A stretch of DNA of 63,064 bases, filler included, from Perkinsus chesapeaki ATCC PRA-425 (GCA_013115145.1; 13 parts of 13 records of this genome joined end to end with filler, not necessarily neighbours in it); one strand, 5' to 3'; positions 3,497-24,902 are shown, counted from the first letter of the whole stretch. Numbers and translations are program-made. The notes: generated by a model from the letters alone, not told the origin.

Positions 3497-6400
3497 CTAC
3501 TGTTCTTGCTGCACATCTGCAGTCTCACTACGACTCCTGCACGCATCCAGTGATACTAGTGCCCTCTCTCTCCGCTTGGCATTCTGGCCTCGCCAATACT
3601 CTCGCTTCTTCTCCTGCTTCTTCCGTAGATAGTCGTCAAGGACAGTGACGGGATCGGCGAACGGGCAAAATGTAGCACCCGCCCCTCGACCGATGTACTG
3701 GTGGTGTATACCATGGAAGGTTGAAGCCCACAGCTGGTCGCAAACGCTGCACGACCTCTGCCGCCTACCGTTTTCCTTCCCCTCACAAGATAGTCCTCCG
3801 AGCAGTTGCAAGTTCGCTTGTGCTCTGCGCCTTCTCTCCTCCATTCCAGGCTGCACATGTATGCGTTCCTTCCTGGTTACATTAGATTGATCCACCGCTG
3901 GCTTCATCGGGCATAAGCCATATTTATGGGAGCGGCCATCATACTTATGTGCATTCTCGTCTGGCGGGAGACCACAGTAAGGACATAGGTCTTCGTCTTT
4001 CTTCTCATCTCGTCGCTCGCCTGTTGAGCGATGCTCAGAAGCGTCACCGCGAGATTTCAAGACTTCCTGGTGGACCTCTTTGCTAGTAATAGCTTTTGGC
4101 CCTCCATCAAAGCATGAAGTTAAAATCTTGACATCAGCGGCTTTGACTGGTTCTTGCAAGGCCGCCTCGCACGAGGATGAAACAGCAGATAGCGTATTGT
4201 GGAGGTGCATCATCTCACTCCTCGTGGTAGCATCGAACATTGACTCTCTCGCTGGTAAAGAGTGAAGTTTGAGCTGCTTCTTTATCCACACGTCTGCCAT
4301 ACCGTATGTTACATCAAGCAAGGCTGGAGCGGCTACTCCGTCGGTACGAGAAAGGCATATTCGCTGATGCTTGAAGTCATTGTACCGTGCCAGGCATTTC
4401 TTCGTTAAGCTATCACCACGATGAGAGCTGGCGAACTCGTTCAAAACCTTCAAGCATATAGTCTGCATTTCGTCATTAAAAGACGGCGAGACCCCTCCAG
4501 GCGACGAGGTTAACGCTCTCCTTTTCGCTACATTTCGAGGCGTCCTGGTTTCAGTCAAACACCCGAAAAGACATTCATCAGATGGAATGCTCCGAGTTGG
4601 GCTCTCAAAAGCTGCATTCTCGGCTTTCTTCTCAGCCAGCAGGGAAAGTTCATTCATCGCCATATCATCAAGATCACCTTCTTCTGTATCTAATAATGAC
4701 TTCTTGAGGCTCTAAGAGGGTCATGAAGGGTGTACCTGTCCCTGGAGAATCAGATGTCATGTCTTTTCCCTCCCACAATTCCTCCATATCCAAAACTGCA
4801 ACTAAATCTTCCTCCTTGAGGTCGTCTTCACTCATCATCTCCGGGAATGAATCAAGAGGACGAGTAGGTTCCCCCACATCAGTCGTTATGCTGATACTGC
4901 ACTGCCGACCATACTCGAATCCAACTAGAGGGAGCTCGCTGTCTTTATGTGCCAGACTATAGTCTGGAAACTCGGCCGCGTCCAGAGCCCCCGCTGCAAT
5001 ATAAAGCTCGATTTCGCGAGCGGTCAGAGCGAGCGGAGGGACTTTCTTTTTTAGAACTATCATCCTTTTTCTATTAAATTTGGATATCAGCCAAGATAGC
5101 CGGCAATCGTAAACGGTCGCTGTTAAGCCATTCCATGACGCGAACGTTTTGGTAAGCACGGAGTGCATGCATTCATTTTTTGATGTCCCCCTAAGGGACT
5201 GATACTCAACTAATGAATGGGCACTCCCCCTAAACCGAACATTCCCGATGGCCCGGTAGGGGGGATTGGTGAGATCATCTTGACAGCAGCCGTTCCTCAG
5301 ATGAACTAGCTGCTGCTGGACTACTTTTAATACCTAAAGTACTACCAAGTAAATATCAAATATTAGTGTAATTTCGTGGTATTACCTTTTTCGTGATAAT
5401 GGGTGATGTAGCGTCAGCGGACGACCTTGATTCATGACACGTTTTTTTCAAATTTAAATGAGCCGCCTGATCTGCCAGTTGATAACTCTCCACAACTCTT
5501 TTCACGCGGTCAGCCGTTTCTTTTCCATCGCCTATGATTCTTCGAACGAATCGACACTTTTCTTTCCGAGTTATAGGTTCATCATCGCCAACTGCTTTTT
5601 TGGCCTCAGTGAGGAGCTGTATGTCCAAGGGATGACATTGGTAAATAGCCCGACTAAGGGCTTTTAAAAACTCTGCGCGTCGGGGGTTTTCGGCGGGCAC
5701 TTGACGGCCCACTCTCATTATTAAGTGCGCACCATCTAAAACCACTTGATACTCTCTCTTCCAACCTTCTCGGGGTATTGCCCTCACTCCCTCCTTGCCG
5801 CTACAACATGCGAAATCAAGATATAATCTTTTTGGTGGCCTTCCCTGATGTCTGCTAGAGATCTCTTTGAAGAGATTTCCCAGCCATGACTCGCTGGTGC
5901 TGGGAATGGCGACAATATTTAGGCACAAGTTATGATCGCCAATGACAGTGGCCGTTTGGCCTGATGAACCAATTATGTCCTTACCTAAGGTATTGAGACC
6001 AACTAGGTTCCACCAATATTACCACCCTAAGTTACCTCTTGTTTTTTTAATAACTCCTCGTTGGCAGTCGCAGCTCAGGGCATACTCGCTTGTGACCTGG
6101 CGCAGCTCTCTACGTAGGTAGATTCTATTTTTTCATAATCCCAAAGTAATACGGCCACTAGGAAGCGCTGACTCGGGATAAACCCCTTATCAAATGCTGG
6201 GAAACCTTCAATGAGATTCGCCGCTTCTAGACGAAGTGCTATTCTGTTTCGTCGCATGCTCTCGAACGCTGCCTTGGACTTAAGATACTCACTCCATACT
6301 GCACCCTCTACTATACGGTGCACACTCGCGACACTCGATTCTCTGAGAAGCTTCACCAAAGATTCGTCCGCTGCGTTTGCAGAACCGTGGGTAATGAACT

Positions 6401-6947
6401 GTTGACGGCACTGGGTAGTAGCATCCAGACCGCTGATGTATCTCTCGTCGGTAGATACCCAGTTCTTTTTGCAGCTAACACATCTGATCCCCATATTCTG
6501 CAGCCCATAAGGCAGCCCCAGGGTGTAAGCGGTTTTGGTTCGACCGGTCGAGTTCGCTGAGATGCGCAAACTTCCACAATAAAAACACCGGCCATTTAGT
6601 GGTGCCCACACGAAATGTCGAAGAAAACCGGGCTTTTCAGGCGCCCAACCAATACCTATAGCCCTCAGCTCGGTCATATTCAACGACTGGTAGCCCTTCG
6701 ATAAAGGGGCAATGACTCTGCTCTCTGCCGCCAGAGGGCGTTGAGGCCCGTTACTACCAGTAGCTCCTTCTAACGTCTTCACTTCGCAGTCATCGGTTTT
6801 GGCCACCTTGGCGGGCGGAGCATCCTCGCTGATATCACACGAAGGCTTCCTTTTGTCACATGCACTAGAAGACGATTGTGGTGTTGGACTATGAAAGCCG
6901 CACAAGCAGGGCAAGTATCCTCCCTTGAAGTGGTCTTTGATTGCCAT
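3497..6947 (-). mobile_element. Dada-superfamily DDE transposase gene (DUF6729-like), spliced, with apparent frameshifts
   Basis: ORFs 6075-7043, 5356-5928, 4674-5168 and 3497-4663 join into one protein. Motifs: HFVWAP..RCFYC N-terminal region; ALSCDCQRGVIKK (D about 6068); PPKRLYLDFACCS (D about 5816); VVLDGAH (DxxH, 5725-5736); YQSLRGTSKNECMH (E about 5173); two C-terminal Cys/His knuckles (CPYC..H..LCP and CSVC..H.YIG..FCP). GT-AG introns near 6022-5973 and 5386-5336. Frame changes near 6090 and 4700 are unexplained. Family assignment is by motif recognition. Confidence 0.75.
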
Positions 6948-7090
6948 GGCGTTCTTCTGACTGCCCTTATACGCACAAAGGTAGCGACGAAAGGTAAGAG
7001 GACGGCTCAGCCGGAACAAGAGTTCCAATCTTGCAGCTGCCACCTGCGCCGTGCTGAAATTCTATCCCTCAAATGCAATTCTAAAGGGTC

Positions 7091-7113
7091 GGCTGTGTGG
7101 TCTAGTGGCATGA
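7091..7113 (+). tRNA. 5' 23 nt of a tRNA-Pro-like sequence, cut by linker
   Basis: ggctgtgtggtctagtggcatga is identical to 3077-3099. Confidence 0.6.
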
Positions 7114-8163
7114 NNNNNNNNNNNNNNNNNNNNNNNNNNNNNNNNNNNNNNNNNNNNTTAATTAATTAANNNNNNNNNNNNNNNNNNNNNNNNNNNNNNN
7201 NNNNNNNNNNNNNCTCGTCTCGCTCCGTCTACAGCTGACGACATCTTTGTCCCCGTTCACAATCACGACCCTATACTACCCTCACACTGCATGAATGAAG
7301 CAACTGGTGGGCGAAGCCCACCACGGATATTCCCAGCGACAAGCAACCGCATATCGAGAGGGTCAGAGGTAGTACGGCAGTATCGTTCCCAATCTGCGGG
7401 AATCCCCATTGCTACTCCAGCCTATACCATATTATACGGCGTATAGTATACGCCATAATATGGCCAATATATGATGCATATTATGCAGCTTACGGTAACC
7501 GTAGGCTGCATATGGCTGTAGCAGCCCCACAAATCATAAGCTACTAGTAGTAGCCAGGCTACTGTGGCCTACGGAAATAATGTCAGCAACTGGAATTTAG
7601 TTTCTTCTGATAAGGACATCAAGCAGCTAGAATCATTCGTGACTCGGATAATCGAGGGGCTCCTTACCGAGCTTTACCGCTGTGAGGCCGTGAGGCAGTC
7701 AGGTAACTGTATTTGGCATTTCTGTCAGGGTCGGCGCAGAATTCGAATTTCAGGTTTAGCTCTAGTTATCGGTAAGGACCCAGTCCGCTTATTAAAGAAT
7801 TGGACAGCAGTGCGGCCTTGCCTCCTTAGCGTAAGTATCTTAGATCTAGATTGATGAGTTAATAACGATAACCAGTTTTGGGGATCATTTTGCCAAACTG
7901 TGCATCGTCAAGCCGCTTGATTCAAGCGCAACGTGGTCTCGTACTCATTCTAATGCGTCCGATAGGTAATACCTATCCAATGCCGGCGACTTGTAGATGA
8001 TATCGGAGATCTCAAGTACATCACGAGTTGTTATCCGCGCCCCCAGTACTTTCCCCAGTAATTGACGAACTTGATTCAGACATGATGAATCGTATAAAAA
8101 GACTTGAACCGCCCCGCGGCCACAGGAGACGCCCCTCCAAGGAGACGCTCCCTCAGCCCCTCC

Positions 8164-11204: not shown

Positions 11205-14200
11205 TCAAGCCTTTGCTGTACCAACCCTTATCCTCCAATTGGTGTAATGGGAGTCGCCAGTGGCGACTCGCCACCTTATGCCATCGTTTATCATAGCTTT
11301 TACTGTATTCATACCAATCATCAATGATGATTCCTCATTGTAGCTGTTGTTGTTACCGTTACCACTACTCTTGGCATTGCCAACTTTGTGGTTACCTGTG
11401 GACCACAGACTGGGTGGTGTTGTTGCTGGGGGTGTTCGTGGAGTGAGGATCTGATCCTCATGATATGATTCATATCGTACAGTACAACATACAAGTAAGA
11501 CATCTTCGCCAGCGCTAGGTGAATTTCGCTCGATTACAAATGAGTCTTCGTAAGATGCTGAGGCAACACTGTTGCAGCCATAACAAGGATTTAACAATAA
11601 AGCCCAAGTTGGGCCAACTGGGCTGCCCAACATGAGTCAGTCAATGACTGACAGTCATTTCACACACACTATGCTTGGGCCAAGCAGCTTGGCTGCCTAG
11701 CCTAGGCAGCCGCGTCACGTAACCACCGTCAAGATCCAGCCGTTCTACCTCAGTGGTTATAATAATTATAATATAATTCTTACTTGAACATGCAGGCGGC
11801 TCCGGATCGATCCCTGGCAGTGAGAACTTCTCACTGAGAGCGCATCCGAGTCGGATGATCCGACTATCAAACGCACCAGATACATTGTCTATCCAAGAAT
11901 CAGCGCCCACAGAACGATGCTAGCTCAGTTGGGTGCCTCAAGTGTTGACTGCCACCAGCTAGAAACATCACATCAACATCTTTATTCTATAACTGGTCCA
12001 CTGGCTAATGAAGTACCTTGAAATACGCCTGGAAATTTACAGTACTACTACGACTCGGTAAATATTCGTAGCGCTGCGTGCTCCGAAGGAAGCTCCTTGC
12101 AAGGTCTGTAGCATAGTGTTGTTGAAGAAGTCTAAGACTTTGCAAGCGAAGCACTCCGATCGCCCCCAAAGAACTCTTGGTTGACCTGTATCTCTCTAGC
12201 ATATGGCGGGTCGCGTTATCCCCAGTGGCAGCCCGGGGGCTGGTACCGAAAATATAGTTCGCGGAACGTTGCTATGTCCGGTGTGGGGGCTCCGTTGGTA
12301 TCCAGCCTGCATCTTCGGAGTCAATATTGTACTATGTACCGACAGGTGACGGACGCGTCCGTCACAAACTCTCAAGACGCAAAACTCGAATATGCTGAAC
12401 GAAAGCATTTCTACAGTTAACCATTAGCAGACTTCGGCGCTGTTGCTGCTCGAGGAGGCAAGTTCTCCTTGGTATCGATACCATTCCATCCAGCGTCGTG
12501 AAACGCTACCTTCCTCGTATGAAGGTGTTCCAGCCAAGCTTTTTGCCGACCCTGAATACATACCCAGTTAGAAGTTTCAAAAATCATCATGGTATCTCAC
12601 CCAATCAGTTATCGGGCGCAAACAGTTTGGCAGGGACTCCAGAGCTGCGTGGCGAGTCTTCTCAGCTTCACTGCCGTCACGTGTGGCTTCTGTGTAATCT
12701 AATATACTCCGGACAAGGTGTCCTCCAGCTGGTCCTGTCATCTTAGGGTCATACCTGCCCACTTCATAATGATGATGAATGCCAGCTATCAACAGCTGCT
12801 GCTGCTGTTTACCCTCCCTCGGCGCAGCAGAGCACCTTGCCGTGGTCCAGGCATGATGCTACGTATGGGTATAGCCATCCAAACCTAATCGGTTGGGGCT
12901 ATCGTACTACTTCTTGAGATTAACCTACCACTCGGGAGAGAGCCTGCAGTCCATACCCGGCCCTTGGTACTTATACTGCGACTGGGAGTGGTCAAGTGCA
13001 TCAAATCCACAAAGCAATAGCTACAAACGTTACCAACATGAAGAGCATCATCGATGCTTGTTGCCATGAGACTCACTAAAACATCTGGTTTCCATTGTTC
13101 TAGAACTGGTCGTGTTATCTGTGTAACAACATCGGTGTACTCCCTATCACCATCCCCTTCTCTCATCTCGAAGTTTAAGTTCATTCCTCGGGCTCCTGAT
13201 GCTTGCCGACCTAACAAAGCTGATCAACCTGGCTACTATGGCAGCGTGTGACCTAGATCAGTATGGGCGCCTGTGCCCGGCATGATAATACCTCCATCAC
13301 GAGACTTGCCCCACCGATGTACCGACATATGTAGAACATCAGCGTCCCTATAGAACGCAGTCTCATTGCCATTACCATGATGCACCTGGTTTACAGAATC
13401 ATGACAATACATGCCGGGCAGCTCACATCAACATCGAGAATCGCGAACTTGATTTTCTTTCCCTCATGGATCGCCGCGGTCTGTGCCACCTTGATGGCGT
13501 ACGCAACGGCGTTTATGAAGCAGAAACCGAGGGACAGCTGAGGCTTAGCAATCTAACACACCGGGCCGGACAGGGCTACCTCATCCCCGGGCTGGATGTT
13601 CATGGACGACCCCATTAACGGGGCATTCTCCGACATCTCCGACATACCACCGTCAGAGTCCAGTGCATCATCATCCAGCTCAGAACTGGCCAGATTCATT
13701 CCTGGTAGCACTGAGGAGCAACACACAGTCCACTCACAACTTGGTGGAGCCTCGTCACCTGACTCGTCGCCAGAGTGCTCGGCCGCAAATGAGGCCACGA
13801 ATGCCCTCATTTCATCAGCCTCCTGTGGCTTAATGAGCCCAGGAGTCTCCAAGCAGACCGGACAGTACCTTTACAACCGGAAGGTTATTCCGAGGCCCGT
13901 TCGGATTAGACCTCCCATACCAGTTTCGAGAAGCAAACTCGGGCTTCTTAAGTATGGATTTGGGTAGAGGGTCCGGCAGGCAGTATACATGCCAGCTCTT
14001 GTCACAGCCCTCCCTGTCGCAATTTAACATGTAGTCCTTGTCGCCGTGCTCCTGGCACTCCTCACATCTGAAAGATCAAAGCCGTGGAATCACAGCCGGA
14101 GATGGAGTATCGTACGTGGCATCAATTAGGAACCCCTCGGCAGTCCTCGCTCCCTTGTTCTTTGGTGAGTTCATAAATTTTACAGCGGAGGCTTCAAGTG

Positions 14201-16642
14201 CGTTCAATTCCGGCATATCCTGACATCACCGATGCCACTAGCACCGAAGACGGAGACCAATGGCTCACATCTTCTGGGTGGATATCCTCCGACTTTACCC
14301 GATAGGGGACATGATGGCATGCCGGCCGTGCCAACACGAAGGCCGTGGGAGCACTTCCGGACAGGACCTGTGTATCGAGGCATCATCGCGTCGGTGTCTG
14401 ACCAGAGCCTGGGTGGTTGCTCACCGCAACTAGAGCGTCCCGCATCATACCGCAGCGGAGGAGGGCAGCCTTCAGAGTGTAGGGGTCCATGCAGCACTCC
14501 CCGGGCCATAGGGTCAGCGCTCGGCAAATTAATCGGGCGCACCGCTTCGAGCAGAGATCCACAACCTGGTGGGCGGCAAGTGTAGGTGGCTGATCATGAA
14601 TCGGCTCTTTTACTGGTAGCTCGCTGTCTGGTATCTCTTCAAGAGGCTTGTCTTTAAGTTCTACTTGTTGTTGAAGATAGTTGTCAATCGAGACCAAGTC
14701 AGAAAGGTATCGTTTAGAGTGAATATTAGTGACCAAAACCTAAACGAGCGATGGCTCCCTACCGCTCGCATAGGAGGAGGAGGAACGCTCACATCCGAAA
14801 CCGTCACAGCATTGGAAACACTGTCGGCCCACGCGCAAGAGTCCCAAAGAGATGTCTTGCAGTCGGGAACAATGTAGCGCTTCCTAGTCTGCAGCACCCG
14901 CTTGATGCTCAGGACCCACCTGAGCCCCAATGACCGAAGGCCGAGGATTGACAGCAGCAGCAGGTCCTACTACCTGCCGTGCTTGTCTTGAGCTCCTCCA
15001 TTGTGTTTTATGAATAATGGGTTATATAACAATAATGGTATATCTATTGGCCCATCACTCACCAAGTCGTACACGGACCTAAGTGCCGCCGCCCTTATCA
15101 ACCGGAACTGCTGCTGCTGCTGCCCGAGGAGTCTCACTTAGCAGGAAGATCATCCCGGTCAACCCATTGTCCAGCCCGAGGGACACGTTCGGTTGTAGCG
15201 AGCTTCCGGAGTACCTTAATAACGATTGTCTCCGGCGTGGTGAGCCGCTGCCCACCTTTGGCCGCGTCACAGGCGGTGATTTTAATTTACGCTTTCTCGA
15301 AGCGATGCTCTCATCCTCTTCAGAGGAGCTCGACGAAGGGCTAACCCCGAGGAGTGCCAAGCAACAACAACGACTGCTGCTGCTGCTGAGTTCACCTTGA
15401 AGGATATTCCGCTATTTTCCTATCAGCCAGGCGCCGGTCCTGTGGGCTGAGGTCCGAGGCCTGGTTCCGGACGATGATGCGGCGCACCGCCGTAACCGAG
15501 CAATGCTCGCTCTCGCCATCCTCGTAGCGTATGTAGAACCCCAAGCGAGGCCCATACCTGCGCCGCCGCCTCAGATGACCCTAATGCCGGCGGAGGCAGT
15601 ACCATCTAAGAATCTTCCCGTATATGGCAGTGCCACTGAATGTTCGTTTGACATAGCGTCCGATGAGCGACCGAGGGTCTGCTGCATCCGCCACCGGCTC
15701 ATTCCAAAACTGCGGCTTAGCAGGCCTGTGGAAGATCGTCATCTTCAGTCCTGGCAGCCCTCCAGCTCCGGCGGCGCACCTGCCGTCCTCTGGTGTGTAG
15801 TCTTTGTGTCTTTCAACTATTTGCAAGTTCCTTTCCCTCACAAGAACATGCTTATCCGGCACACCATGCAGACGTACCACCCATCTGACAGATGACAACA
15901 CCTCAGCTCCGACTGAATCAATAATAGACGCGAAAGATATTGACGAAAGACAGCTACCTTTCGCACCCACCCCATCCATAAGGCATACAGGCCCCCAAGA
16001 CTCCCTCCTACCTTTCACTGTCCATATGCCACTTTTCCACCGTACATTGTGCACCGTTATATTCTCCATGGAGCAACAGACCAACAATGCGGGCTTTACA
16101 ACCTTGAACCAAGCCCCTGTGAACTCCATTACACCAAAGCCTACACCTTTGTGAATGTCCGCTTCCCCAGGTGCCGTCGAGGCCGTAGACTCGGTTTGTG
16201 GGTCCAAAAGCTCGAGATTGACCGAGTGGAGTCTGATTCGCTGAGGCTCCTCCTCCGGGAGACTACCTGAACCACCCACTAATGCCATCCCATTTGCCAC
16301 ACCGCGGACCTCTATGGGGATGGAGCTCTTTTAAAGTGAATACTACATATCCATCGCCTTGGACCTATCCGTGAGGAGAGAGCTATTCTGCTATTTGAGC
16401 AGTGCGACCCACCTCATCAACAAGCCCTATTCGACCATTCAACCACTGGTTCCGGGGGTGCTTCAAGCCTGCTATTTTAGCCCGAGACCCGACTACAATG
16501 CCTGGCTCTTCGGTAGATGTGGCCATGGCTACCACCCTATCCATGTATCCCTTTTTCATCAACATACAATAACTCAACACTATCGAATTCACCGCAACGG
16601 TTTTACCCTTTTCCAATCAGCGGCAGATGATTCAGATACCAT
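11205..16642 (-). CDS. Large multi-exon class II-type histone deacetylase with N-terminal SH3/Tudor-like segments and an internal PHD finger; both ends approximate
   Basis: Spliced motifs in order: LLYNPLFIKH (about 15030), IHSKRYL, AFVLARPACHH (HH at 14311-14316), PHD CEEC..CDREGC..HVYC..WYCPVC (13853-14066), LGFCFINAVA (GFC at 13520-13528), AILDVD|VHHGNG, MNLNF..GDREY, KPDVL|LLLCGFDALD, KVLCCAEGG|Y. Splice-compatible continuity upstream to the Tudor-like LIGRYVKRTFSGTAIYGKILRWY segment (about 15585-15655). Confidence 0.8.
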
Positions 16643-17674: not shown

Positions 17675-20600
17675 TTACAACAAAGCATCCACATCATCAG
17701 CAAATCTCGATTGGTATCCTCGTTTGACATTGGTCTTAGATTTGGCCTTGGTGCCGCGATTGGCGGGATCCTTGACCTTGTAAATGCGGACAATCCAGTT
17801 CTCAGAGGTAAAGACCTCGTCAAAGTACTTAGGCTTCACATCGGGGACACCTGAAACAACGGCAAGTCAGCAGCAGCAGCAGCAGCCGACTAGCTACCAA
17901 TTTGCTGCCCTCTCGCAGCATCGTAACCTCTGGAGATCTCGGCGGCCCTGTGATAACACAGCTTGTACATAACAGAGCTCTTCATCCTGGGCGTGGCTGA
18001 TTGATCAACTCTATATCTGATAGAAATGACATGTACTTAGACAGAGCGAAGGACCGCCGCCGACCCTTGGGGACCGATGAAATCGGATTCTTGTACCAAA
18101 TCGGGGTAGACTCCAGCCCCGATACGAATCGGCCAGAGGAACTTATTTATATCATCACCAGAGTACTGGGAGACGCCGCCATAGAGGACCTGAACCGAGA
18201 TGGCCATGTCCCAATAAAGGTCGGGTATCCTACCAAGACATAGTCAACATCCAAACGCCTGAGTATAGGAAGAGCGTTCTCTTCGGTTGAGGCCAGCACT
18301 AGACCGACTGTGGCGATGTGAGTGTTGTTCCAGGTGTTGTTATCAACCAAAACCTAAGGAGGAGGTAGGGCATTGACGAATCCACATTCGAGGCATCTTA
18401 CCGTTCTGTTGCCCATGACGGTGATCTGGTAGCCATAGTCCCACCAACTCAGGATCTTGCTGTCTTGAGGAGTGTTCATTCTAAGCCAGTAGTAGGCCTC
18501 TCTGAAGTCATCTTGAATCAGACGGGTCCCGTCACGTAATTGATCTGAAGATGTCCATAGTAGATAGCACAAGTCCTACTAGCAGATCCGTCCTTACATG
18601 ACATGACGATGCTCGGGGAACTGTAGGCCATAGACGAAGTGAACACACAGTGCTTGATGTAGTTGGTGCCTGAGAGCAAGCAGCAGCAGCTGCTGCTTGA
18701 TACCAGGCGGAGTCGGTCTTACATTGGTAACCGAGAACCCCTAGAATAGCGAGGGCCATAAAGCGCGGCATCTGATGGCATAAAGATGGAACAGTAGGAT
18801 GCAGGGTAACCTACATAGGGCAACTTGGAGCCACCGCCACTCTTCTTGGCGCCAGGGCCCTCAACATGGTCATTGAACGAACGGAGGTATCTTAAATGGG
18901 ACAGGCGTAGCTGCTGGATGGATTAGAGATATGGGGGCTTACGGCATAACTGAGGAGGCTACCACAGAGGCACCTACACCAGCCAGGCACGAGGCAGCAG
19001 GGGCTAGGACCTGTGCACGGATTGGAGGTTATTCAGTGCAGAGGATGGGTTACCAGGAGGAGACGAATCATAACTCCAGAGAAGTATACTGCCAGTATAC
19101 CATAGACCCCAAGAAAGAGCGAACCATCGGAGAGTCGACGCATGCAGTAGTACCTAGGGGAGGTTGGTGGTGATAGGGGAGGGATGGGGTGGAGATTACA
19201 TGCCAATGGGGGCCAAGAAGGGCAGGCAGTGGAGATCCATAACGTAGTTGGACCATGAAGTTGGCTGATGCTCCGAGACGGATGCAATAATAGGAATGTA
19301 CCTGATTGCTCCAACAGGTCTACACACACCAGCAGCAGCACCGTGCTTACTTTGAGGCGTAGGTTGGGTCGAGTAGCGTCATACTCCTTCCGGACCAGGC
19401 CGTCTCTGAAGAAGGTCTCACTAATAGTGACATAGTAAAGGTGCAGCTTACTTCCCGTGAGAGTTAGGTAGGCGAAGAGACCTACGAACCCTAATGCAGC
19501 TGCTGCCACCATTAGCTTTCCCATAACCTGAATACAACAGAATAAGATACTCATTGTTGTCGGTGTTGGTGATGTTACCGCAAAGGCCCCCTCTGGAAGG
19601 ACCTTTCTGAGATACCCAACTAGCATGTAGACCGAACTGACTATGAACATGCCGTGGGAGGCCATATGCTCACTCGAAGTGATGGCCTGGAAGTTAACGA
19701 ATGGGATGTTAAGGCAGAACATAGTGCCGATGATGTAAAAAACGGTGTACCTGTGGAAGAGGAGGAGAAGATAACCACCGAGGAAGGCGCTAACTGATGC
19801 TTACGCCACGTAATGTCTCTTGTTGAATTTACCCAATATTAGCAAAGCAAACACATAGATTGATACCGTATTGGTGATGAAGACATATCCTCCCCATGAG
19901 GCCACCATATAGAAGTATCTAACAACAAGGCATGGTCAGCAGCGGTAGCAGGAGATAGGGCTTACGCAACGGCGGCCAGCATCGACCACAGCATGCTACC
20001 GGTGTTCACGGCCTTGACAAAAACCTGAATAAAATATAGCGGGAAGGGATAGGGCAAGAAGCCATACGTAAAAGGTGTTGGTCAGCGCAAAGATTGCCAC
20101 TGCCTCATTATCGTAGGAGCCCGCAACAGAGCGAGAAAGATACGATGGACATATACCCAAAAAAATGGCGCTGAACAGACCGGCTTCCGGACGCCCTGAA
20201 CGCACAAATTCAGAACAACGGCAAAGGCGAGCGACGGGAAGCGTCGTACCTGTGACCTCCTTGGTGAGGAGATAGGCAGCGATGGCAGTGAAGGCTGAGA
20301 ACACTGGAGCCATGAAAACACATACGTTACGGATATTGACGCATATACCAAAAAAGTTGAGGACCTACAAGAGAGGATGAATGTGAGCATTGGGTGCAAT
20401 AAGGTACCCCGTGAAAGACAGCAGATGTAGTCATGAGGCCAGGGTACAGGGTCTGACCGATCACACGGCCTAGTGGATACCTACGGCGAAGGGATACTAC
20501 TGATACGGCTGGTGGGAAGCCTTCTTACCAGCTGCCATTGTCGAACCAATTCCAAAACTCATAAAACCCTTCTCTAGTGAGATACTCTGTGGTACGGTAG

Positions 20601-21138: not shown

Positions 21139-22130
21139 TCATAAATAGTCCATTTTAAGCTGCAGTAGATCTCGCTTAAGATGCTTTTCTCCTTCAACAT
21201 CAGATCCCCACGACCTGGCCACATACACCCGTCTAGCATTTTTATCGTCAACTTCAATGGATAGGACCCCTCGCCAAACACCCACGTCACAGCCGCACAG
21301 CACACTGCCGCTTACAAGGTCGGCGATAAATATATTCCGGCCGTAGCTGCCTCCCAGACATGCCAGACGACCCTCAGCGAACATACGGCACTCCATCACG
21401 CATCTGATGGGAAGCACTTTTGCTTTACTCGCCTCAAGACCGGCAGTGAAGGTGTTCAGGTAGACGCCTTTGTCTTGATAGAGACAGCTGTAGAGTAAGC
21501 GGATCCTGCCGGACCGCGGGGACTGATAGACATCGAAGGACCACACTCTCCAGTGTGTTTGTACGATCTCATCGCACTCCCCACTCATAGTATCAATACG
21601 GTAAAGCGTATCACCAACACCACTGGACGAGACGCCTTCATCGATGGCAAAAAGATAACCTTGAGAGTATCTTAGACAACCCCATCGATGCTTGGTTGGG
21701 GATTTAAAAGATGAGGGGTAGACGCCACTCGGCCTTGTGATGGGGACAACTCCAGACCTACCCGAGGACTTAAGCCAGTAAATTGCGTCAGCTGAATTGA
21801 AGAAAGTGAGTCCCGAACCGTCGGTGCATATGCCAATGGACGTCGTAAGCGTTTGACTGGTGACCGGCCCGAAGTATCCAAAATCACAGAGGACCTTTAA
21901 AGGTTCCAAAGTTCTCGGGCATACGGTCATAATGCTGTTATTGCAGCGTCCAACCAACACCATCTTGCCACCATGGTCGAAGATTAACCCACCAAATGCC
22001 CAGACCCCATGGGAATCAGTGGTGCAGTGGCCTAGTCTGAGAGATGAGGGCTGTCGCCTTTTATTCAGGTAACCCCATATCGCCACTAACAACTCAATGG
22101 GAGCATCTGGTAGACTTAGACACCGCCGAG
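21139..22130 (-). CDS. Hypothetical protein with an F-box-like N-terminal motif and a probable beta-propeller-like body; true start upstream and unresolved
   Basis: 317-aa ORF. The frame extends upstream as ..RRCLSLPDAPIELLVAIWGYL (F-box-like), followed by many short beta-strand-like segments. Confidence 0.55.
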
Positions 22131-22593: not shown

Positions 22594-24902
22594 TCACAAC
22601 ACCACGGAGGGTTCTTCGGGACTAGCAGCAACACCAGGAGCGACAGCAGTGGCACGTGGAGGCCCCTCCTCGTAGACAACACCATCGGCACGGCTGGCCG
22701 AGTAGGAGTACCATGGAAATTCCCAACGGTCCGGCATACCCCAATGCGGCACCTTCTCGCCTGCGTAGTTGGTCCACTGGAATGGGTCGGTGCCATGGCC
22801 AAAGGCGGGGGCGCTCACCATAAGGACCTTGTCTTGTTCCAGCAGAGAGGAGCTAGTTACCTTACAGTCGATTGCACCATATGCCTTCACAGGCCCGCAG
22901 GATTCATAAGCACTATCGCTTTGAGGTTGGTATGGCAGATCGTACCTAAAGGACAATAAAAATTCCGCTACCGAGGATCGAACTCGGGTGATTACCTGCC
23001 AGCAATGGCGTTCTTAGGGCAGTTCTCAGAAAGTGGATCGGTCCTCCAATGATTAGTTGTCATGATTCTCATCATACTCTCCGTATCATTAACCTGTCCT
23101 TGCCACTCTCGGAACAACCGTGCCCGAGGACAATCATCATACTGGTACCATTGACCGTGCTTCGCCGCTGCTGCCGTATATCCTCCGACCTGCCCCAAGA
23201 ATACCCTACCAACCATTGCAGCCTTGCTACATCCTGTATGTTCTTGAAATAGGGCCTGTTATAACTAGCCCAGTAGCCCTGCTCTTGGAGCTTATCGGAC
23301 ATGTCCTTGGCCACTATAAGGCCAGGCATTTGTTCGACCATCCAGAATGTTCCTTCCGGCATAGGCCCCACTCTGCCACTACCGTTCCATTTACGGAAGT
23401 GATTGAAGTCAATGATCATCCATTGGTTATTGTATGTCCCGCTATTGTGTCGAGAGAACGTATTGTACCTACCAGGCCACCGGCATGAGACCACCATCCG
23501 CCGCCCAGAGACCCTCCTCAGCGCCTACCAGTCTCTTCCACTAGAAGCCATCAATGTGGCCACAACGCTACGGATGACCGTGGTGACGCTCAGTGGCCTG
23601 ACCTTCTCCTGTAGCAGCCGCATACTTACAGACTCGGTCGTGGTCTCAGTAATGGCCAGCTGCGTATCATGTGTCTGACCAATTTGACCATCGGAACTAC
23701 TCAACTATTGCTAGTAGCTTACAATGAGCCAGTCATCAGTGGAGCTGAAGTAGCCGGGATAGCTACTCATGGAGATGTCCCGACTTCTAATAGAAGCATG
23801 CTGGACATGTGGGAAGGAGAAGGACTTATAGACGCGAAGCATCTCGGTGTACGTGGTCCAGGTGTTATGCGATACCTAATAGGAGCGGTCCGCCCTTCCG
23901 CTTGTTGTTCTGTTACAATGAGGTCGTCGTCTGTTAATTTGATAAGAACGCTGCATTTGGTCTCCTCGGCCATCGGGTATCGAGATATCCTCAGAGGGTC
24001 CTCAGCTCGAGCGGCAGGATCAGTGGTCACTGCCGACTCTATCTCCCCGATCTCCGAGTTTGAATTGAGCTCATAGAGCGCCAAAAATGTTACCGGCATG
24101 TAGGCCCATGATCTGCGCAGATCTTGGGCCCCGCAACCCCACTGCTGCCTTGCCTGCTTACTCGTATCCGGTTTCCTTCTTCTGTATGGCTTGCTCTTGC
24201 CGACGTACCAAACCCTCCATCATCCCGTCCAGTCTAGATAGCTGCATCCATACGTTAAACCAAAAGGCATCATCTCCGTGCTTTTCAGCGGCCTAAAGAG
24301 GCAGGTAAGCCACAGGCATTGAAATGAAGACATGCCTGCTCCCGCATAAACATGTATTGGGAATTGAGGAACGCATACACTCGAGGGTCCCGTCTAGGCT
24401 TAGACCATATCATATTGTACATATGTTGGATGACTCGACGGCAGGTAAGATACCTAAAAGGTCGGATTGATCACCTTCGGGTTAAATCCTACCCTTCAGC
24501 AAGGCCCATAGCGTAGAAGTAGTCACGGTCAGTGGCGCCAGGATGCTCATTAGTGGAAATTAGTAAGCGGCCAGTACCAGTGGTTTCCTGCTCATCTGTT
24601 AACCTAGATAGTATCTTCCCCGCTCCCACCTGCGTATCCATCCACGTTGCGTTCACCAAGCCAGCACGGCCGTCCATGGCCGCGTTAGCATCTTTGTCAT
24701 CTGGCAAGCTCTTCCTTTTAACCGAGAACTGACTGGGCTGATGATGATCACCTACTCCAGGTCTGGTGTCAGTTTCCAGAGAGATGATAGCGACGGAGGA
24801 GTCCTCTATTAGTGGTGGGGCCTCGGAATGAACCAAGGCTGCCAAGAGGAGGAGGAGGAGGACCTGCAGAATTGGCACCGCCGTTGGAAAACCGAAAAGC
24901 AT
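22594..24902 (-). CDS. Secreted phospholipase B-like protein (PLBD, Ntn-hydrolase), multi-exon
   Basis: Signal peptide MLFGFPTAVPILQVLLLLLLAALVHS. Motifs YFYAMGLAEG, KCSVLIKL (Ntn cysteine), LAITETT, HNSGTYNNQWMIIDF, GYWASYNRPYF, PRARLFR, NAIAGR, GAIDCKVT, PHWGMPDRWEFPW. Confidence 0.9.

What the first reader, a model, noticed from the sequence alone, without database searches (positions are those of the whole stretch)
13520..14316. Histone deacetylase with a complete PHD finger inserted inside its catalytic domain
Seen: splicing the minus strand gives AFVLARPACHH (HH at 14311-14316). About 780 nt later comes LGFCFINAVA (13520-13528). Between them lie a full C4HC3 PHD finger (CEEC..CDREGC..HVYC..WYCPVC, 13853-14066) and an acidic tract (SSELDDDALDSDGG). 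Established: in Zn-dependent HDACs, RPPGHH and GFC are normally under 10 residues apart and line the substrate channel. All other catalytic motifs are intact here (DVDVHH, GFD, EGGY). Inference: an active eraser with a histone-tail reader grafted beside the active-site mouth, which could couple H3-tail methylation state to deacetylation. I know of no described HDAC with this architecture. It matters because Perkinsus sits at the base of the lineage in which dinoflagellates remodelled histone-based chromatin.
Basis: partly seen in the sequence, partly recalled or inferred. Interest (0 to 1): 0.82.

Follow-up and report, generated by a model that had tools for sequence, protein, structure and literature searches.

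The report
Deacetylase with built-in PHD finger
A Perkinsus gene encodes a class II zinc histone deacetylase with a PHD finger and acidic linker (about 190 extra residues) spliced into an active-site loop, an apparently undescribed design shared by a small group of Perkinsus and environmental relatives.

Summary
I built a minus-strand model of 24 exons and 966 aa (16526..12417). It places 197 residues between the tandem His (14311-14316) and GFC (13520-13528); ordinary class II HDACs have 7 there. The insert holds a complete C4HC3 PHD finger and an acidic tract.

No RNA data could be laid, so the evidence that the insert is coding is comparative:
- A P. marinus-like contig (about 70% nt identity) keeps every GT..AG.
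- Exon length differences are all multiples of three; intron differences are not.
- The insert is under purifying selection (pN 0.14, pS 0.77).
- The P. olseni model KAF4674260.1 has the same layout.
- A Perkinsus paralog and three metagenome homologs carry HDAC-N, PHD and HDAC-C in one uninterrupted ORF.

On a core-only tree the ten insert-carrying sequences form one clade inside class II. Tandem His, Zn ligands and EGGY Tyr are kept, except in one decayed paralog. AlphaFold2 on the P. olseni ortholog gives a normal class II fold, a confident PHD and disordered linkers.

Activity, histone reading and the PHD's position at the pocket mouth remain inferred. The sequences are already public, but I found no paper describing the design. 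Verdict: a new variant of a known kind, of moderately high interest.

The parts
12417..16526 (-). Whole coding span of the gene model: 24 exons, 23 GT..AG introns (22 of 41-59 nt, one of 127 nt), 966 aa, stop TAA at 12419-12417
   Evidence: Model built from the window against contig L001. It is 81.5% identical over 959 aligned positions to P. olseni KAF4674260.1.
15780..16526 (-). Exons 1-5: two copies of a roughly 45-aa N-terminal module (G-x-[KR]-A-[KR]-I-x-G-L ... N-G ... W-x-V-x-L) with no Pfam match
   Evidence: Also present in paralog B and in the environmental homologs.
15396..15725 (-). Exons 6-7: PTM/DIR17-like Tudor domain (LIGRYVKRTF ... IRYEDGESEH)
   Evidence: Pfam PF21743 in the orthologs (E 1.3e-4 and 2.4e-4, below cut-off) and in environmental P0049 (29.7 bits, above the 27.2 cut-off).
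14269..14367 (-). Exon 14: end of the HDAC N-half with ARPACHH (HH at 14311-14316), then the conserved VPYRVKSEDIHPED at the start of the insert
   Evidence: The stretch after HH is kept in L001 through synonymous changes.
14220..14268 (-). Intron, 49 nt, GTGAGC..CAG
   Evidence: Diverged and with a non-3n length difference in L001 (47 nt).
14116..14219 (-). Exon 15: linker DMPELN...KFMNSPKNKGARTAEG...
   Evidence: Conserved in L001 with one 3-nt indel. Low pLDDT in the model.
14068..14115 (-). Intron, 48 nt, GTACGA..CAG; holds an in-frame TGA at 14078-14076
13921..14067 (-). Exon 16: PHD finger, first six Zn ligands (C-x2-C-x11-C-x4-C-x4-H-x2-C)
   Evidence: Pfam PF00628 E 1.3e-5. pN 0.094 against pS 0.813 for the whole PHD, exons 16-17.
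13869..13920 (-). Intron, 52 nt, splitting the Trp codon before YCPVC
   Evidence: It is 54 nt in L001.
13580..13868 (-). Exon 17: last PHD ligand pair CPVC (13853-13864), helix KPQEADEMRAFVAS, variable linker, acidic tract (13646-13687), and the conserved re-entry segment NIQPGDE
   Evidence: Length differences against L001 are 3, 9 and 6 nt only.
13538..13579 (-). Intron, 42 nt, GTAGCC..CAG; holds an in-frame TAG
   Evidence: It is 47 nt in L001, where read-through shifts the frame (P0001).
13427..13537 (-). Exon 18: LSLGFCF (GFC at 13520-13528) through ILDVD
   Evidence: Pfam Hist_deacetyl profile positions 115-151.
13253..13385 (-). Exon 19: VHHGNG (Zn-binding His) and MPGTG, with Met in place of the second channel Phe
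   Evidence: Pfam 31.2 bits, profile positions 151-191.
12929..13020 (-). Exon 21: LLLCGFDAL (Zn-binding Asp) plus a family-specific extension of about 8 residues
12601..12884 (-). Exons 22-23: AEGG|Y, the catalytic Tyr, split by a 58-nt intron

Best explanation
This is one gene for a 966-aa chromatin protein. From the N terminus it has two small modules with no Pfam match, a PTM/DIR17-like Tudor domain, and a class II Zn-dependent lysine deacetylase domain. In the deacetylase domain, loop L3 (tandem His to GFC, 7 residues between the motifs in ordinary enzymes) has been expanded to 197 residues. The insert reads: a conserved two-strand stalk (HH-VPYRV ... PGDE-LS-LGFC), a disordered linker of about 35 residues, a C4HC3 PHD finger followed by a helix, a disordered acidic tract of about 30 residues, and the re-entry segment.

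Shown here: the exon structure, purifying selection on the insert, the same layout in three Perkinsus species, two further Perkinsus paralog groups and environmental relatives, and a single clade for all insert carriers. All Zn ligands, the tandem His and the catalytic Tyr are retained. A normal class II fold with a well-folded, looped-out PHD is predicted for the ortholog.

Inferred: the enzyme is active. The PHD binds a histone H3 N-terminal tail, most likely in the unmodified K4/R2 state. Because it hangs on flexible linkers from a loop next to the substrate tunnel, it holds the tail, or a neighbouring one, within reach of the catalytic pocket. This would be reader-eraser coupling within one domain, comparable to PHD1 inserted between JmjN and JmjC in KDM5 demethylases.

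My odds: architecture 0.93, active deacetylase 0.65, histone-tail reading by the PHD 0.5.
For: Gene structure:
- An in-frame path runs from HH to the PHD through two introns of 49 and 48 nt.
- All 18 introns compared with L001 keep GT..AG in both sequences; the model's 23 introns are all GT..AG. Exon length differences against L001 are 9, 3, 6 and 3 nt, while intron differences are not multiples of 3.
- The spliced proteins are 84.5% identical while the DNA is about 70% identical.

Selection:
- Insert pN 0.144 / pS 0.771.
- PHD 0.094 / 0.813.
- C-terminal half of the protein, GFC to stop (HDAC C-half plus tail), 0.079 / 0.874.

Same layout elsewhere:
- P. olseni KAF4674260.1 (P0029).
- Paralog groups P0043/P0042 and P0045/P0044.
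- P0017, which is L002 6001-7674, one ORF with no intron.
- Environmental P0049 and P0046, each one ORF on a compact eukaryotic contig.
- Pfam finds PHD plus Hist_deacetyl, with or without the Tudor, in these proteins.

Residues: the catalytic-residue table is.

Phylogeny: on a tree of core columns only, the insert carriers form one clade (SH-aLRT 100), and the PHD-less P0048 is nested inside it.

Structure:
- AlphaFold2 of P0029:318-951 gives pLDDT 81.2 and pTM 0.74. The PHD block scores 83-95 and the linkers below 50. Strands at 181-182 and 355-356 form the stalk.
- Foldseek matches HDAC7, HDAC4, HDAC6, HDAH and HDA15 with target TM 0.74-0.83.

PHD type: the nearest solved PHDs are WSTF, UHRF1, KDM5A/B/D PHD1, BAZ2A/B, ATXR5, AIRE and CHD4.

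Against: - No transcript evidence exists for this species. Only two tiny runs were offered and nothing could be laid.
- A public P. marinus gene model (P0041, Pmar_PMAR026730) skips the whole insert with the junction HHVPYR|LSLGFC, which restores the canonical 7-residue spacing.
- The second channel Phe is Met in the Perkinsus A/B and environmental members (Leu in group C). The Arg of the HPExPxR motif (HDAC8 R37, important for acetate release per PMC8278956) aligns with an invariant Trp, with an Arg one position earlier in group A only.
- The clade sits on a very long stem branch (2.66).
- One paralog group has lost the Zn ligands, so enzymatic activity is dispensable for at least some family members.
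- PHD specificity is inferred only from weak sequence similarity (E 1e-4 to 1e-2).
- The model's coordinates and PAE were not available, so the PHD's position relative to the pocket is unmeasured.
Confidence: 0.7

Rival explanations
1. The PHD and acidic exons are removed from the main mRNA, either as one intron of about 760 nt or by skipping exons 15-17. The functional enzyme would then be a canonical class II HDAC with HHVPYR|LSLGFC, and the PHD form would be minor or an annotation artefact.
For: The junction is in frame and restores exactly the canonical 7-residue spacing. A public P. marinus model (P0041) uses it. No RNA data could be laid to exclude it.
Against: The stretch after VPYR (VKSEDIH-ED) and every insert exon are conserved at the protein level, with third-position changes and 3n-only indels. 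Twenty-two of the 23 introns are 41-59 nt and the longest is 127 nt, so a 760-nt intron would be far outside the range. P0041 also skips other conserved HDAC exons, which marks it as a poor ab initio model. In intron-free homologs (L002, L003, L004) the PHD cannot be spliced out.
Confidence: 0.06
2. The architecture is real but the protein is not an active deacetylase. It would be a reader or scaffold, or an enzyme with another substrate such as a polyamine or a non-histone acyl-lysine, built on an HDAC fold.
For: The channel Phe is replaced by Met, and the Arg equivalent to HDAC8 R37 is uncertain. The stem branch is very long. Paralog group C (P0032/P0017) has lost HH (now HQ), GFC (now GGH) and two Zn ligands, yet keeps the PHD with the best-but-one Pfam score of the family. 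Among the canonical HDACs sampled, HDAC6 scores highest and HDAC10 is also among the hits; from memory, both act on non-histone substrates.
Against: In groups A and B and in the environmental lineages, every Zn ligand, both His and the catalytic Tyr are retained under strong purifying selection. Group C shows what decay looks like when activity is lost.
Confidence: 0.2
3. The PHD is not a histone-tail reader. It would be a structural or regulatory zinc module, such as a lid or autoinhibitory plug on the pocket, or a docking site for a partner protein, analogous to the structural Zn-binding subdomain of class IIa HDACs.
For: Class IIa HDACs carry a Zn-binding subdomain next to the pocket that mediates partner binding (established knowledge, from memory; these enzymes are among the best fold matches). 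PHD similarity to characterised readers is weak. The PHD has an extra 8-9 residues before the last Cys pair (alignment). P0048 has lost the PHD but keeps a 49-residue insert and all catalytic residues.
Against: The protein also carries a Tudor-type domain, which fits chromatin targeting. All eight Zn ligand positions and the acidic residues ahead of the first beta strand are kept across paralogs. The long disordered linkers suit a tethered reader better than a fixed lid.
Confidence: 0.25

Closest known systems
Class II Zn-dependent HDACs (HDAC6, HDAC10, fungal Hda1, plant HDA15, bacterial HDAH)
   Same: Same fold (Foldseek target TM 0.74-0.83) and same Pfam family. It has RP..HH, GFC, D-x-D-x-H, GFDA and EGGY with Tyr, as in class IIb and Hda1.
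   Different: Between the HH and GFC motifs, loop L3 has 197 residues in place of 7 and carries a PHD finger. RPPGHH reads RPACHH. The second channel Phe is Met. The HPExPxR motif is replaced by GG-x-QD..G-x-W. There is an extra segment of about 8 residues after GFDA.
Class IIa HDAC4/HDAC7 structural zinc-binding subdomain
   Same: An extra Zn-binding module built from insertions in catalytic-domain loops next to the pocket (from memory). These enzymes are the top fold matches, and the clade groups next to them on the tree with weak support (87).
   Different: That module is a single CCHC site formed by the loop between helices 1 and 2 and a beta hairpin; it is not in L3 and is not a PHD. Class IIa enzymes have His in place of the catalytic Tyr, whereas this protein keeps Tyr.
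KDM5/JARID1 demethylases (JmjN-ARID-PHD1-JmjC)
   Same: An eraser whose catalytic domain is split by an inserted PHD finger. KDM5A/B/D PHD1 are among the nearest solved PHDs. From memory, PHD1 reads unmodified H3K4 and stimulates catalysis.
   Different: Different enzyme class (a JmjC oxygenase, not a Zn hydrolase), different mark, and no evolutionary link between the two insertions. Allostery here is untested.
Reader-HDAC coupling in trans: Sin3/Rpd3 with ING/Pho23/Rco1 PHDs, NuRD with CHD4 PHDs, LSD1-CoREST-HDAC with BHC80/PHF21A
   Same: PHD fingers direct deacetylases to H3 tails of a given methylation state (established knowledge). CHD4 and AIRE-type PHDs are among the weaker sequence matches.

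Membership tests
Zn-dependent histone deacetylase, class II (Pfam PF00850) | Significant match to the Hist_deacetyl profile | tested here: met
   One window exon reaches 31.2 bits against a cut-off of 27.9, and two more exons give partial hits. The ortholog P0029 scores 147.7 bits in two stretches that flank the insert.
Zn-dependent histone deacetylase, class II (Pfam PF00850) | Tandem catalytic His (HDAC8 H142/H143) | tested here: met
   ACHH at residues 493-496, codons 14316-14311.
Zn-dependent histone deacetylase, class II (Pfam PF00850) | Zn ligands Asp-His-Asp (D-x-D-x-H and GFD) | tested here: met
   ILDVDVHH and CGFDA are present and align with the canonical enzymes.
Zn-dependent histone deacetylase, class II (Pfam PF00850) | Catalytic Tyr in EGGY | tested here: met
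   AEGGY at residue 869, split by an intron.
Zn-dependent histone deacetylase, class II (Pfam PF00850) | Two aromatic residues lining the substrate tunnel (HDAC8 F152 and F208) | tested here: not met
   The first (GFC) is kept. The second is Met (MPGTG), as it is in the Perkinsus A/B and environmental members (Leu in group C), while canonical enzymes have F, Y or W. This is not a catalytic residue.
Zn-dependent histone deacetylase, class II (Pfam PF00850) | Arg of the HPExPxR motif (HDAC8 R37) | tested here: inconclusive
   The alignment puts an invariant Trp at that column. Group A has an Arg one position earlier (GRW), group B has Lys, and the others have Gln or Leu. The alignment could be off by one.
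Zn-dependent histone deacetylase, class II (Pfam PF00850) | Arginase/deacetylase fold | tested here: met
   The AlphaFold2 model of the ortholog (pLDDT 81.2) matches HDAC4, 6 and 7, HDAH and HDA15 with target TM 0.74-0.83. This was done on the 81.5%-identical P. olseni protein, not on the window's own.
Zn-dependent histone deacetylase, class II (Pfam PF00850) | Deacetylase activity | not testable with these tools
   Needs an enzyme assay.
PHD finger (Pfam PF00628) | C4HC3 ligand pattern with canonical spacing | tested here: met
   The pattern is C-x2-C-x11-C-x4-C-x4-H-x2-C-x21-C-x2-C. It is kept in all paralog groups; P0049 has His as the last ligand.
PHD finger (Pfam PF00628) | Profile match at or above the gathering score | tested here: met
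   The window exon scores 25.5 bits and P0029 24.9 bits against a cut-off of 24. Paralogs reach up to 38.8 bits.
PHD finger (Pfam PF00628) | Folded treble-clef module | tested here: met
   Model residues 231-300 have pLDDT 83-95. This is a prediction only.
H3K4me3-reading PHD subclass (ING/BPTF type) | Aromatic-cage Trp two residues before the Zn-binding His | tested here: not met
   That position is Ser (K-S-W-H); the Trp sits one residue before the His. The cage position itself is from memory. The nearest solved PHDs are, from memory, mostly unmodified-H3 readers, and ING2 is only a weak hit at E 0.34.
PTM/DIR17-like Tudor (Pfam PF21743) | Profile match above the gathering score | tested here: inconclusive
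   The orthologs score 21-22 bits, below the 27.2 cut-off, while environmental P0049 scores 29.7 bits. The window segment is 90% or more identical to the orthologs there.

The most novel reading that the evidence does not exclude
A lineage-restricted class of deacetylases (Perkinsus and uncultured relatives) has a histone-tail reader built into an active-site loop. Recognition of the H3 N terminus (unmodified K4/R2) would directly gate or position the catalytic tunnel in cis, so that one domain both reads and erases. A catalytically dead paralog that keeps the PHD would act as a competing or regulatory reader.
Probability: 0.35. Interest if true: 0.8.

Novelty: new variant of a known kind. Interest (0 to 1): 0.62.

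Why it matters
Reader and eraser functions are normally joined as separate subunits or as neighbouring domains. A reader inserted into a loop that lines the substrate tunnel is a much tighter coupling, and I found no description of it for any HDAC.

The family provides natural controls that make the idea testable with ordinary biochemistry:
- two active-looking paralog groups,
- one decayed paralog that keeps the PHD,
- one relative that lost the PHD but kept the loop expansion.

It also adds a chromatin regulator specific to Perkinsus, a genus of shellfish parasites. The enlarged L3 loop is a feature that host HDACs lack.

Tried and rejected
- Single long intron (HHVPYR|LSLGFC). I considered this first because it restores the canonical spacing. 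I rejected it as the main form on conservation, intron size and the intron-free homologs, although public model P0041 uses it.
- RNA evidence. Only two runs of about 5 million letters were offered, with a word share of 0.00. Nothing could be laid on 12400-16600. This is no evidence either way.
- A profile search with the family alignment A4 returned only members already known, and even missed the Perkinsus ones. It therefore says little about absence elsewhere.
- The ESM Atlas has no large cluster combining PHD and Hist_deacetyl.
- There is no synteny between the environmental contigs and the window or L001.
- Six literature searches and two papers read found no description of a PHD inside an HDAC domain. 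The published version of the eukaryotic chromatin survey was not held; its preprint mentions no such case.
- A possible 27-nt intron inside exon 17 (GTGAGT..CAG) was rejected. It is too short and in frame, and L001 keeps the frame with 3n indels.
- The PHD's distance from the pocket could not be measured because the model's coordinates and PAE are not returned.

Full report
**1. Observation**

On the minus strand, the codons for ARPACHH end at 14311 and LGFCF starts at 13531, with GFC at 13528-13520. Between them lie a complete C4HC3 PHD pattern (first Cys at 14066, last at 13855-13853) and the acidic run SSELDDDALDSDGG (13687-13646). Pfam recognises PHD in the exon translation (PF00628, E 1.3e-5, 25.5 bits against a cut-off of 24). 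It also recognises Hist_deacetyl pieces, covering profile positions 115-234, in three downstream exons.

**2. Is the insert really part of the mRNA?**

The only RNA runs offered were two tiny ones, and nothing could be laid on the gene. I therefore used comparative evidence.

A protein search with the open frame at 13556-13870 found one Logan contig, L001. It is collinear with the window from 16105 to 12406 at about 70% nucleotide identity. Its products are 96-99% identical to P. marinus ATCC 50983 models. The alignments show a clean exon/intron pattern:
- Conserved blocks with third-position changes alternate with diverged stretches of 41-59 nt.
- These stretches start with GT and end with AG in both sequences.

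I assembled 24 exons (16526..12417, 966 aa). Of the 23 introns, 22 are 41-59 nt long and one is 127 nt.
- Exon lengths match L001 except for differences of 9, 3, 6 and 3 nt. Intron length differences are not multiples of three.
- Two of the four introns inside the insert hold in-frame stops (TGA at 14078-14076; TAG in 13538-13579). The other two shift the frame.
- The spliced proteins are 84.5% identical.
- Synonymous sites are saturated (pS about 0.8), while pN is 0.144 for the insert, 0.094 for the PHD and 0.079 for the C-terminal half from GFC to the stop.

The HH exon continues as VPYRVKSEDIHPED, which L001 keeps through synonymous changes. A 104-nt exon precedes the PHD exon. The best in-frame path found by enumerating donors and acceptors uses introns of 49 and 48 nt.

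**3. Independent support from other genes**

An exhaustive HMMER search with the PHD exon returned two HDAC-containing proteins.
- P0003 is a partial P. olseni model. Its 90% cluster holds the full-length KAF4674260.1 (P0029, 951 aa; UniRef name 'histone deacetylase'). That protein has exactly the layout of my model and is 81.5% identical to it.
- P0017 (557 aa) is encoded on Logan contig L002 at 6001-7674 as one uninterrupted ORF: HDAC N-half, PHD, acidic stretch, HDAC C-half. It corresponds to P. marinus XP_002781031.1.

A further search found:
- two more Perkinsus groups with 99% coverage of the query region (P0043/P0042 at 43% identity and P0045/P0044 at 38%);
- three ENA metagenome proteins (P0046, P0047, P0049) with PHD plus Hist_deacetyl, and in P0049 a PTM/DIR17-like Tudor as well.

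P0049 and P0046 are single ORFs on tightly packed, apparently intron-poor eukaryotic contigs. In these genes the PHD cannot be spliced out.

**4. The rival reading**

Joining HHVPYR directly to LSLGFC is in frame and gives the canonical 7-residue spacing. A public P. marinus model (P0041, Pmar_PMAR026730) does exactly this. I think it is wrong as the main product, for four reasons:
- It needs an intron of about 760 nt in a gene whose introns are 41-127 nt.
- It discards sequence that is under purifying selection.
- The same model also skips other conserved HDAC exons.
- The in-frame GT is simply a Val codon.

Only transcript data can settle whether it exists as a minor isoform.

**5. Anatomy and family**

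The table gives the number of residues between HH and the G of GFC:

| Sequences | Residues between HH and G |
|---|---|
| HDAC6, HDAC10, Hda1 and a bacterial-type enzyme | 7 |
| Window | 197 |
| P. olseni ortholog | 180 |
| Group B | 136-149 |
| Group C | 118 |
| Environmental PHD carriers | 103-108 |
| P0048 (low-complexity stretch, no PHD) | 49 |

Residues by group:
- Groups A and B and the environmental proteins keep R-P, H-H, G-F-C, D-x-D-x-H, F-D and E-G-G-Y.
- Group C (P0032/P0017) reads HQ, GGH and D-x-G-x-Y. This is a decayed active site, yet it keeps a good PHD (35.6 bits).
- The Perkinsus A/B and environmental members have Met where canonical enzymes have the second tunnel aromatic; group C has Leu.
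- The HPExPxR motif is replaced. An invariant Trp aligns with the Arg equivalent to HDAC8 R37, and group A has an Arg one position earlier.

On a tree built from 380 core columns, with insert columns dropped, the ten insert carriers form one clade (SH-aLRT 100) on a long stem inside class II. P0048 is nested in the environmental subclade. The insert therefore arose once, and P0048 lost the PHD later. This was a quick tree, and the placement of the long branches should be treated with care.

**6. Structure**

AlphaFold2 on P0029:318-951 with a 26-row alignment gave pLDDT 81.2 and pTM 0.74.
- The core is confident.
- Model residues 231-300 (the PHD and the following helix) score 83-95.
- Residues 189-224 and 309-340 score below 50.
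- Short strands at 181-182 and 355-356 pair the conserved flanks into a stalk.

Foldseek matches HDAC7, HDAC4, HDAC6 CD1/CD2, HDAH and HDA15 with target-normalised TM of 0.74-0.83. The split domain is thus predicted to fold normally with the PHD looped out.

The insert lies in loop L3, which is residues 142-154 in HDAC8. [quoted passage not shown] This makes a position near the pocket rim plausible. I could not measure it, because coordinates and PAE are not returned.

**7. What the PHD may read**

The nearest solved PHDs are WSTF, UHRF1, KDM5A/B/D PHD1, BAZ2A/B, ATXR5, AIRE and CHD4, at E 1e-4 to 0.2. From memory, most of these bind the unmodified H3 N terminus. The position two residues before the Zn-binding His is Ser here; from memory, that is where K4me3 readers place a cage Trp. 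Acidic residues precede the first strand in all paralog groups. This is a lead, not a test.

**8. Mechanism proposed**

A class II deacetylase is tethered to chromatin by its own PHD, and probably by its Tudor domain as well. The flexible linkers of about 35 and 30 residues would let the catalytic tunnel reach acetyl-lysines on the bound tail or on a neighbouring one. The closest architectural precedent is KDM5, where PHD1 is inserted between JmjN and JmjC.

Alternatives are an inactive scaffold, a non-histone substrate, or a structural or regulatory Zn module. These are listed with odds in the Rival explanations section.

**9. Novelty**

The proteins are already public under generic names. 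I found no paper describing a PHD inside an HDAC domain. The ESM Atlas has no large cluster with this combination. Among 5.8 billion clustered proteins, only Perkinsus sequences and four metagenome sequences showed the expanded loop. The search heuristics limit how much that absence means. I rate the finding a new variant of a known kind.

Noticed in passing
window 15780-16526 (-): There are two copies of a roughly 45-aa N-terminal module (G-x-[KR]-A-[KR]-I-x-G-L...N-G...W-x-V-x-L) with no Pfam hit at E up to 0.1. Paralog B and the environmental homologs share it, so it is part of the ancestral architecture.
   Followed up: partly
L002 6001-7674 (P0017; same as P. marinus XP_002781031.1, P0032): This paralog has a decayed active site (HH to HQ, GFC to GGH, Zn ligands D and H to G and Y) but a well-preserved PHD. 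It is encoded without introns across the whole HDAC-PHD region.
   Followed up: partly
P0040 and P0041 (P. marinus ATCC 50983 models of the ortholog): Both public models of the ortholog look wrong. P0040 reads into the intron after GDE and ends out of frame. P0041 skips the insert and several other conserved exons. The two lie on different contigs, which suggests haplotig duplication in that assembly.
   Followed up: partly
L003 (ERZ27280268) and L004 (ERZ27280278): The environmental homologs sit on very compact, apparently intron-free eukaryotic contigs. A kinase lies upstream and a rhomboid downstream in both, so they are syntenic with each other. There is no synteny with the window. The organism is unidentified.
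   Followed up: partly
P0048 (JGI metagenome, 683 aa): This relative is nested in the clade and has a 49-residue Gly/Glu/His-rich insert in L3 but no PHD. Its catalytic residues are intact. It is a natural control in which the loop is expanded without a reader.
   Followed up: partly
window 15885-16011 (-): This is the only long intron of the gene, at 127 nt. It is about 50 nt longer than its L001 counterpart.
   Followed up: no
window 12929-13020 (-), exon 21: After GFDA there is a family-specific extension of about 8 residues (DHSQSQ.K.QGPGMDC.LSP). It is conserved in all clade members and absent from canonical class II HDACs.
   Followed up: no
window 19033-19722, 21139-22092, 23072-23497, 24489-24902 (-): Other long minus-strand ORFs lie in the same piece. 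One of 229 aa looks hydrophobic, and one of 317 aa is the longest. None was examined.
   Followed up: no
P0002 (1820 aa; top hit): This protein matches the PHD exon in 17 separate stretches at about 33% identity, which suggests a highly repetitive multi-PHD protein. Its source was not looked up.
   Followed up: no
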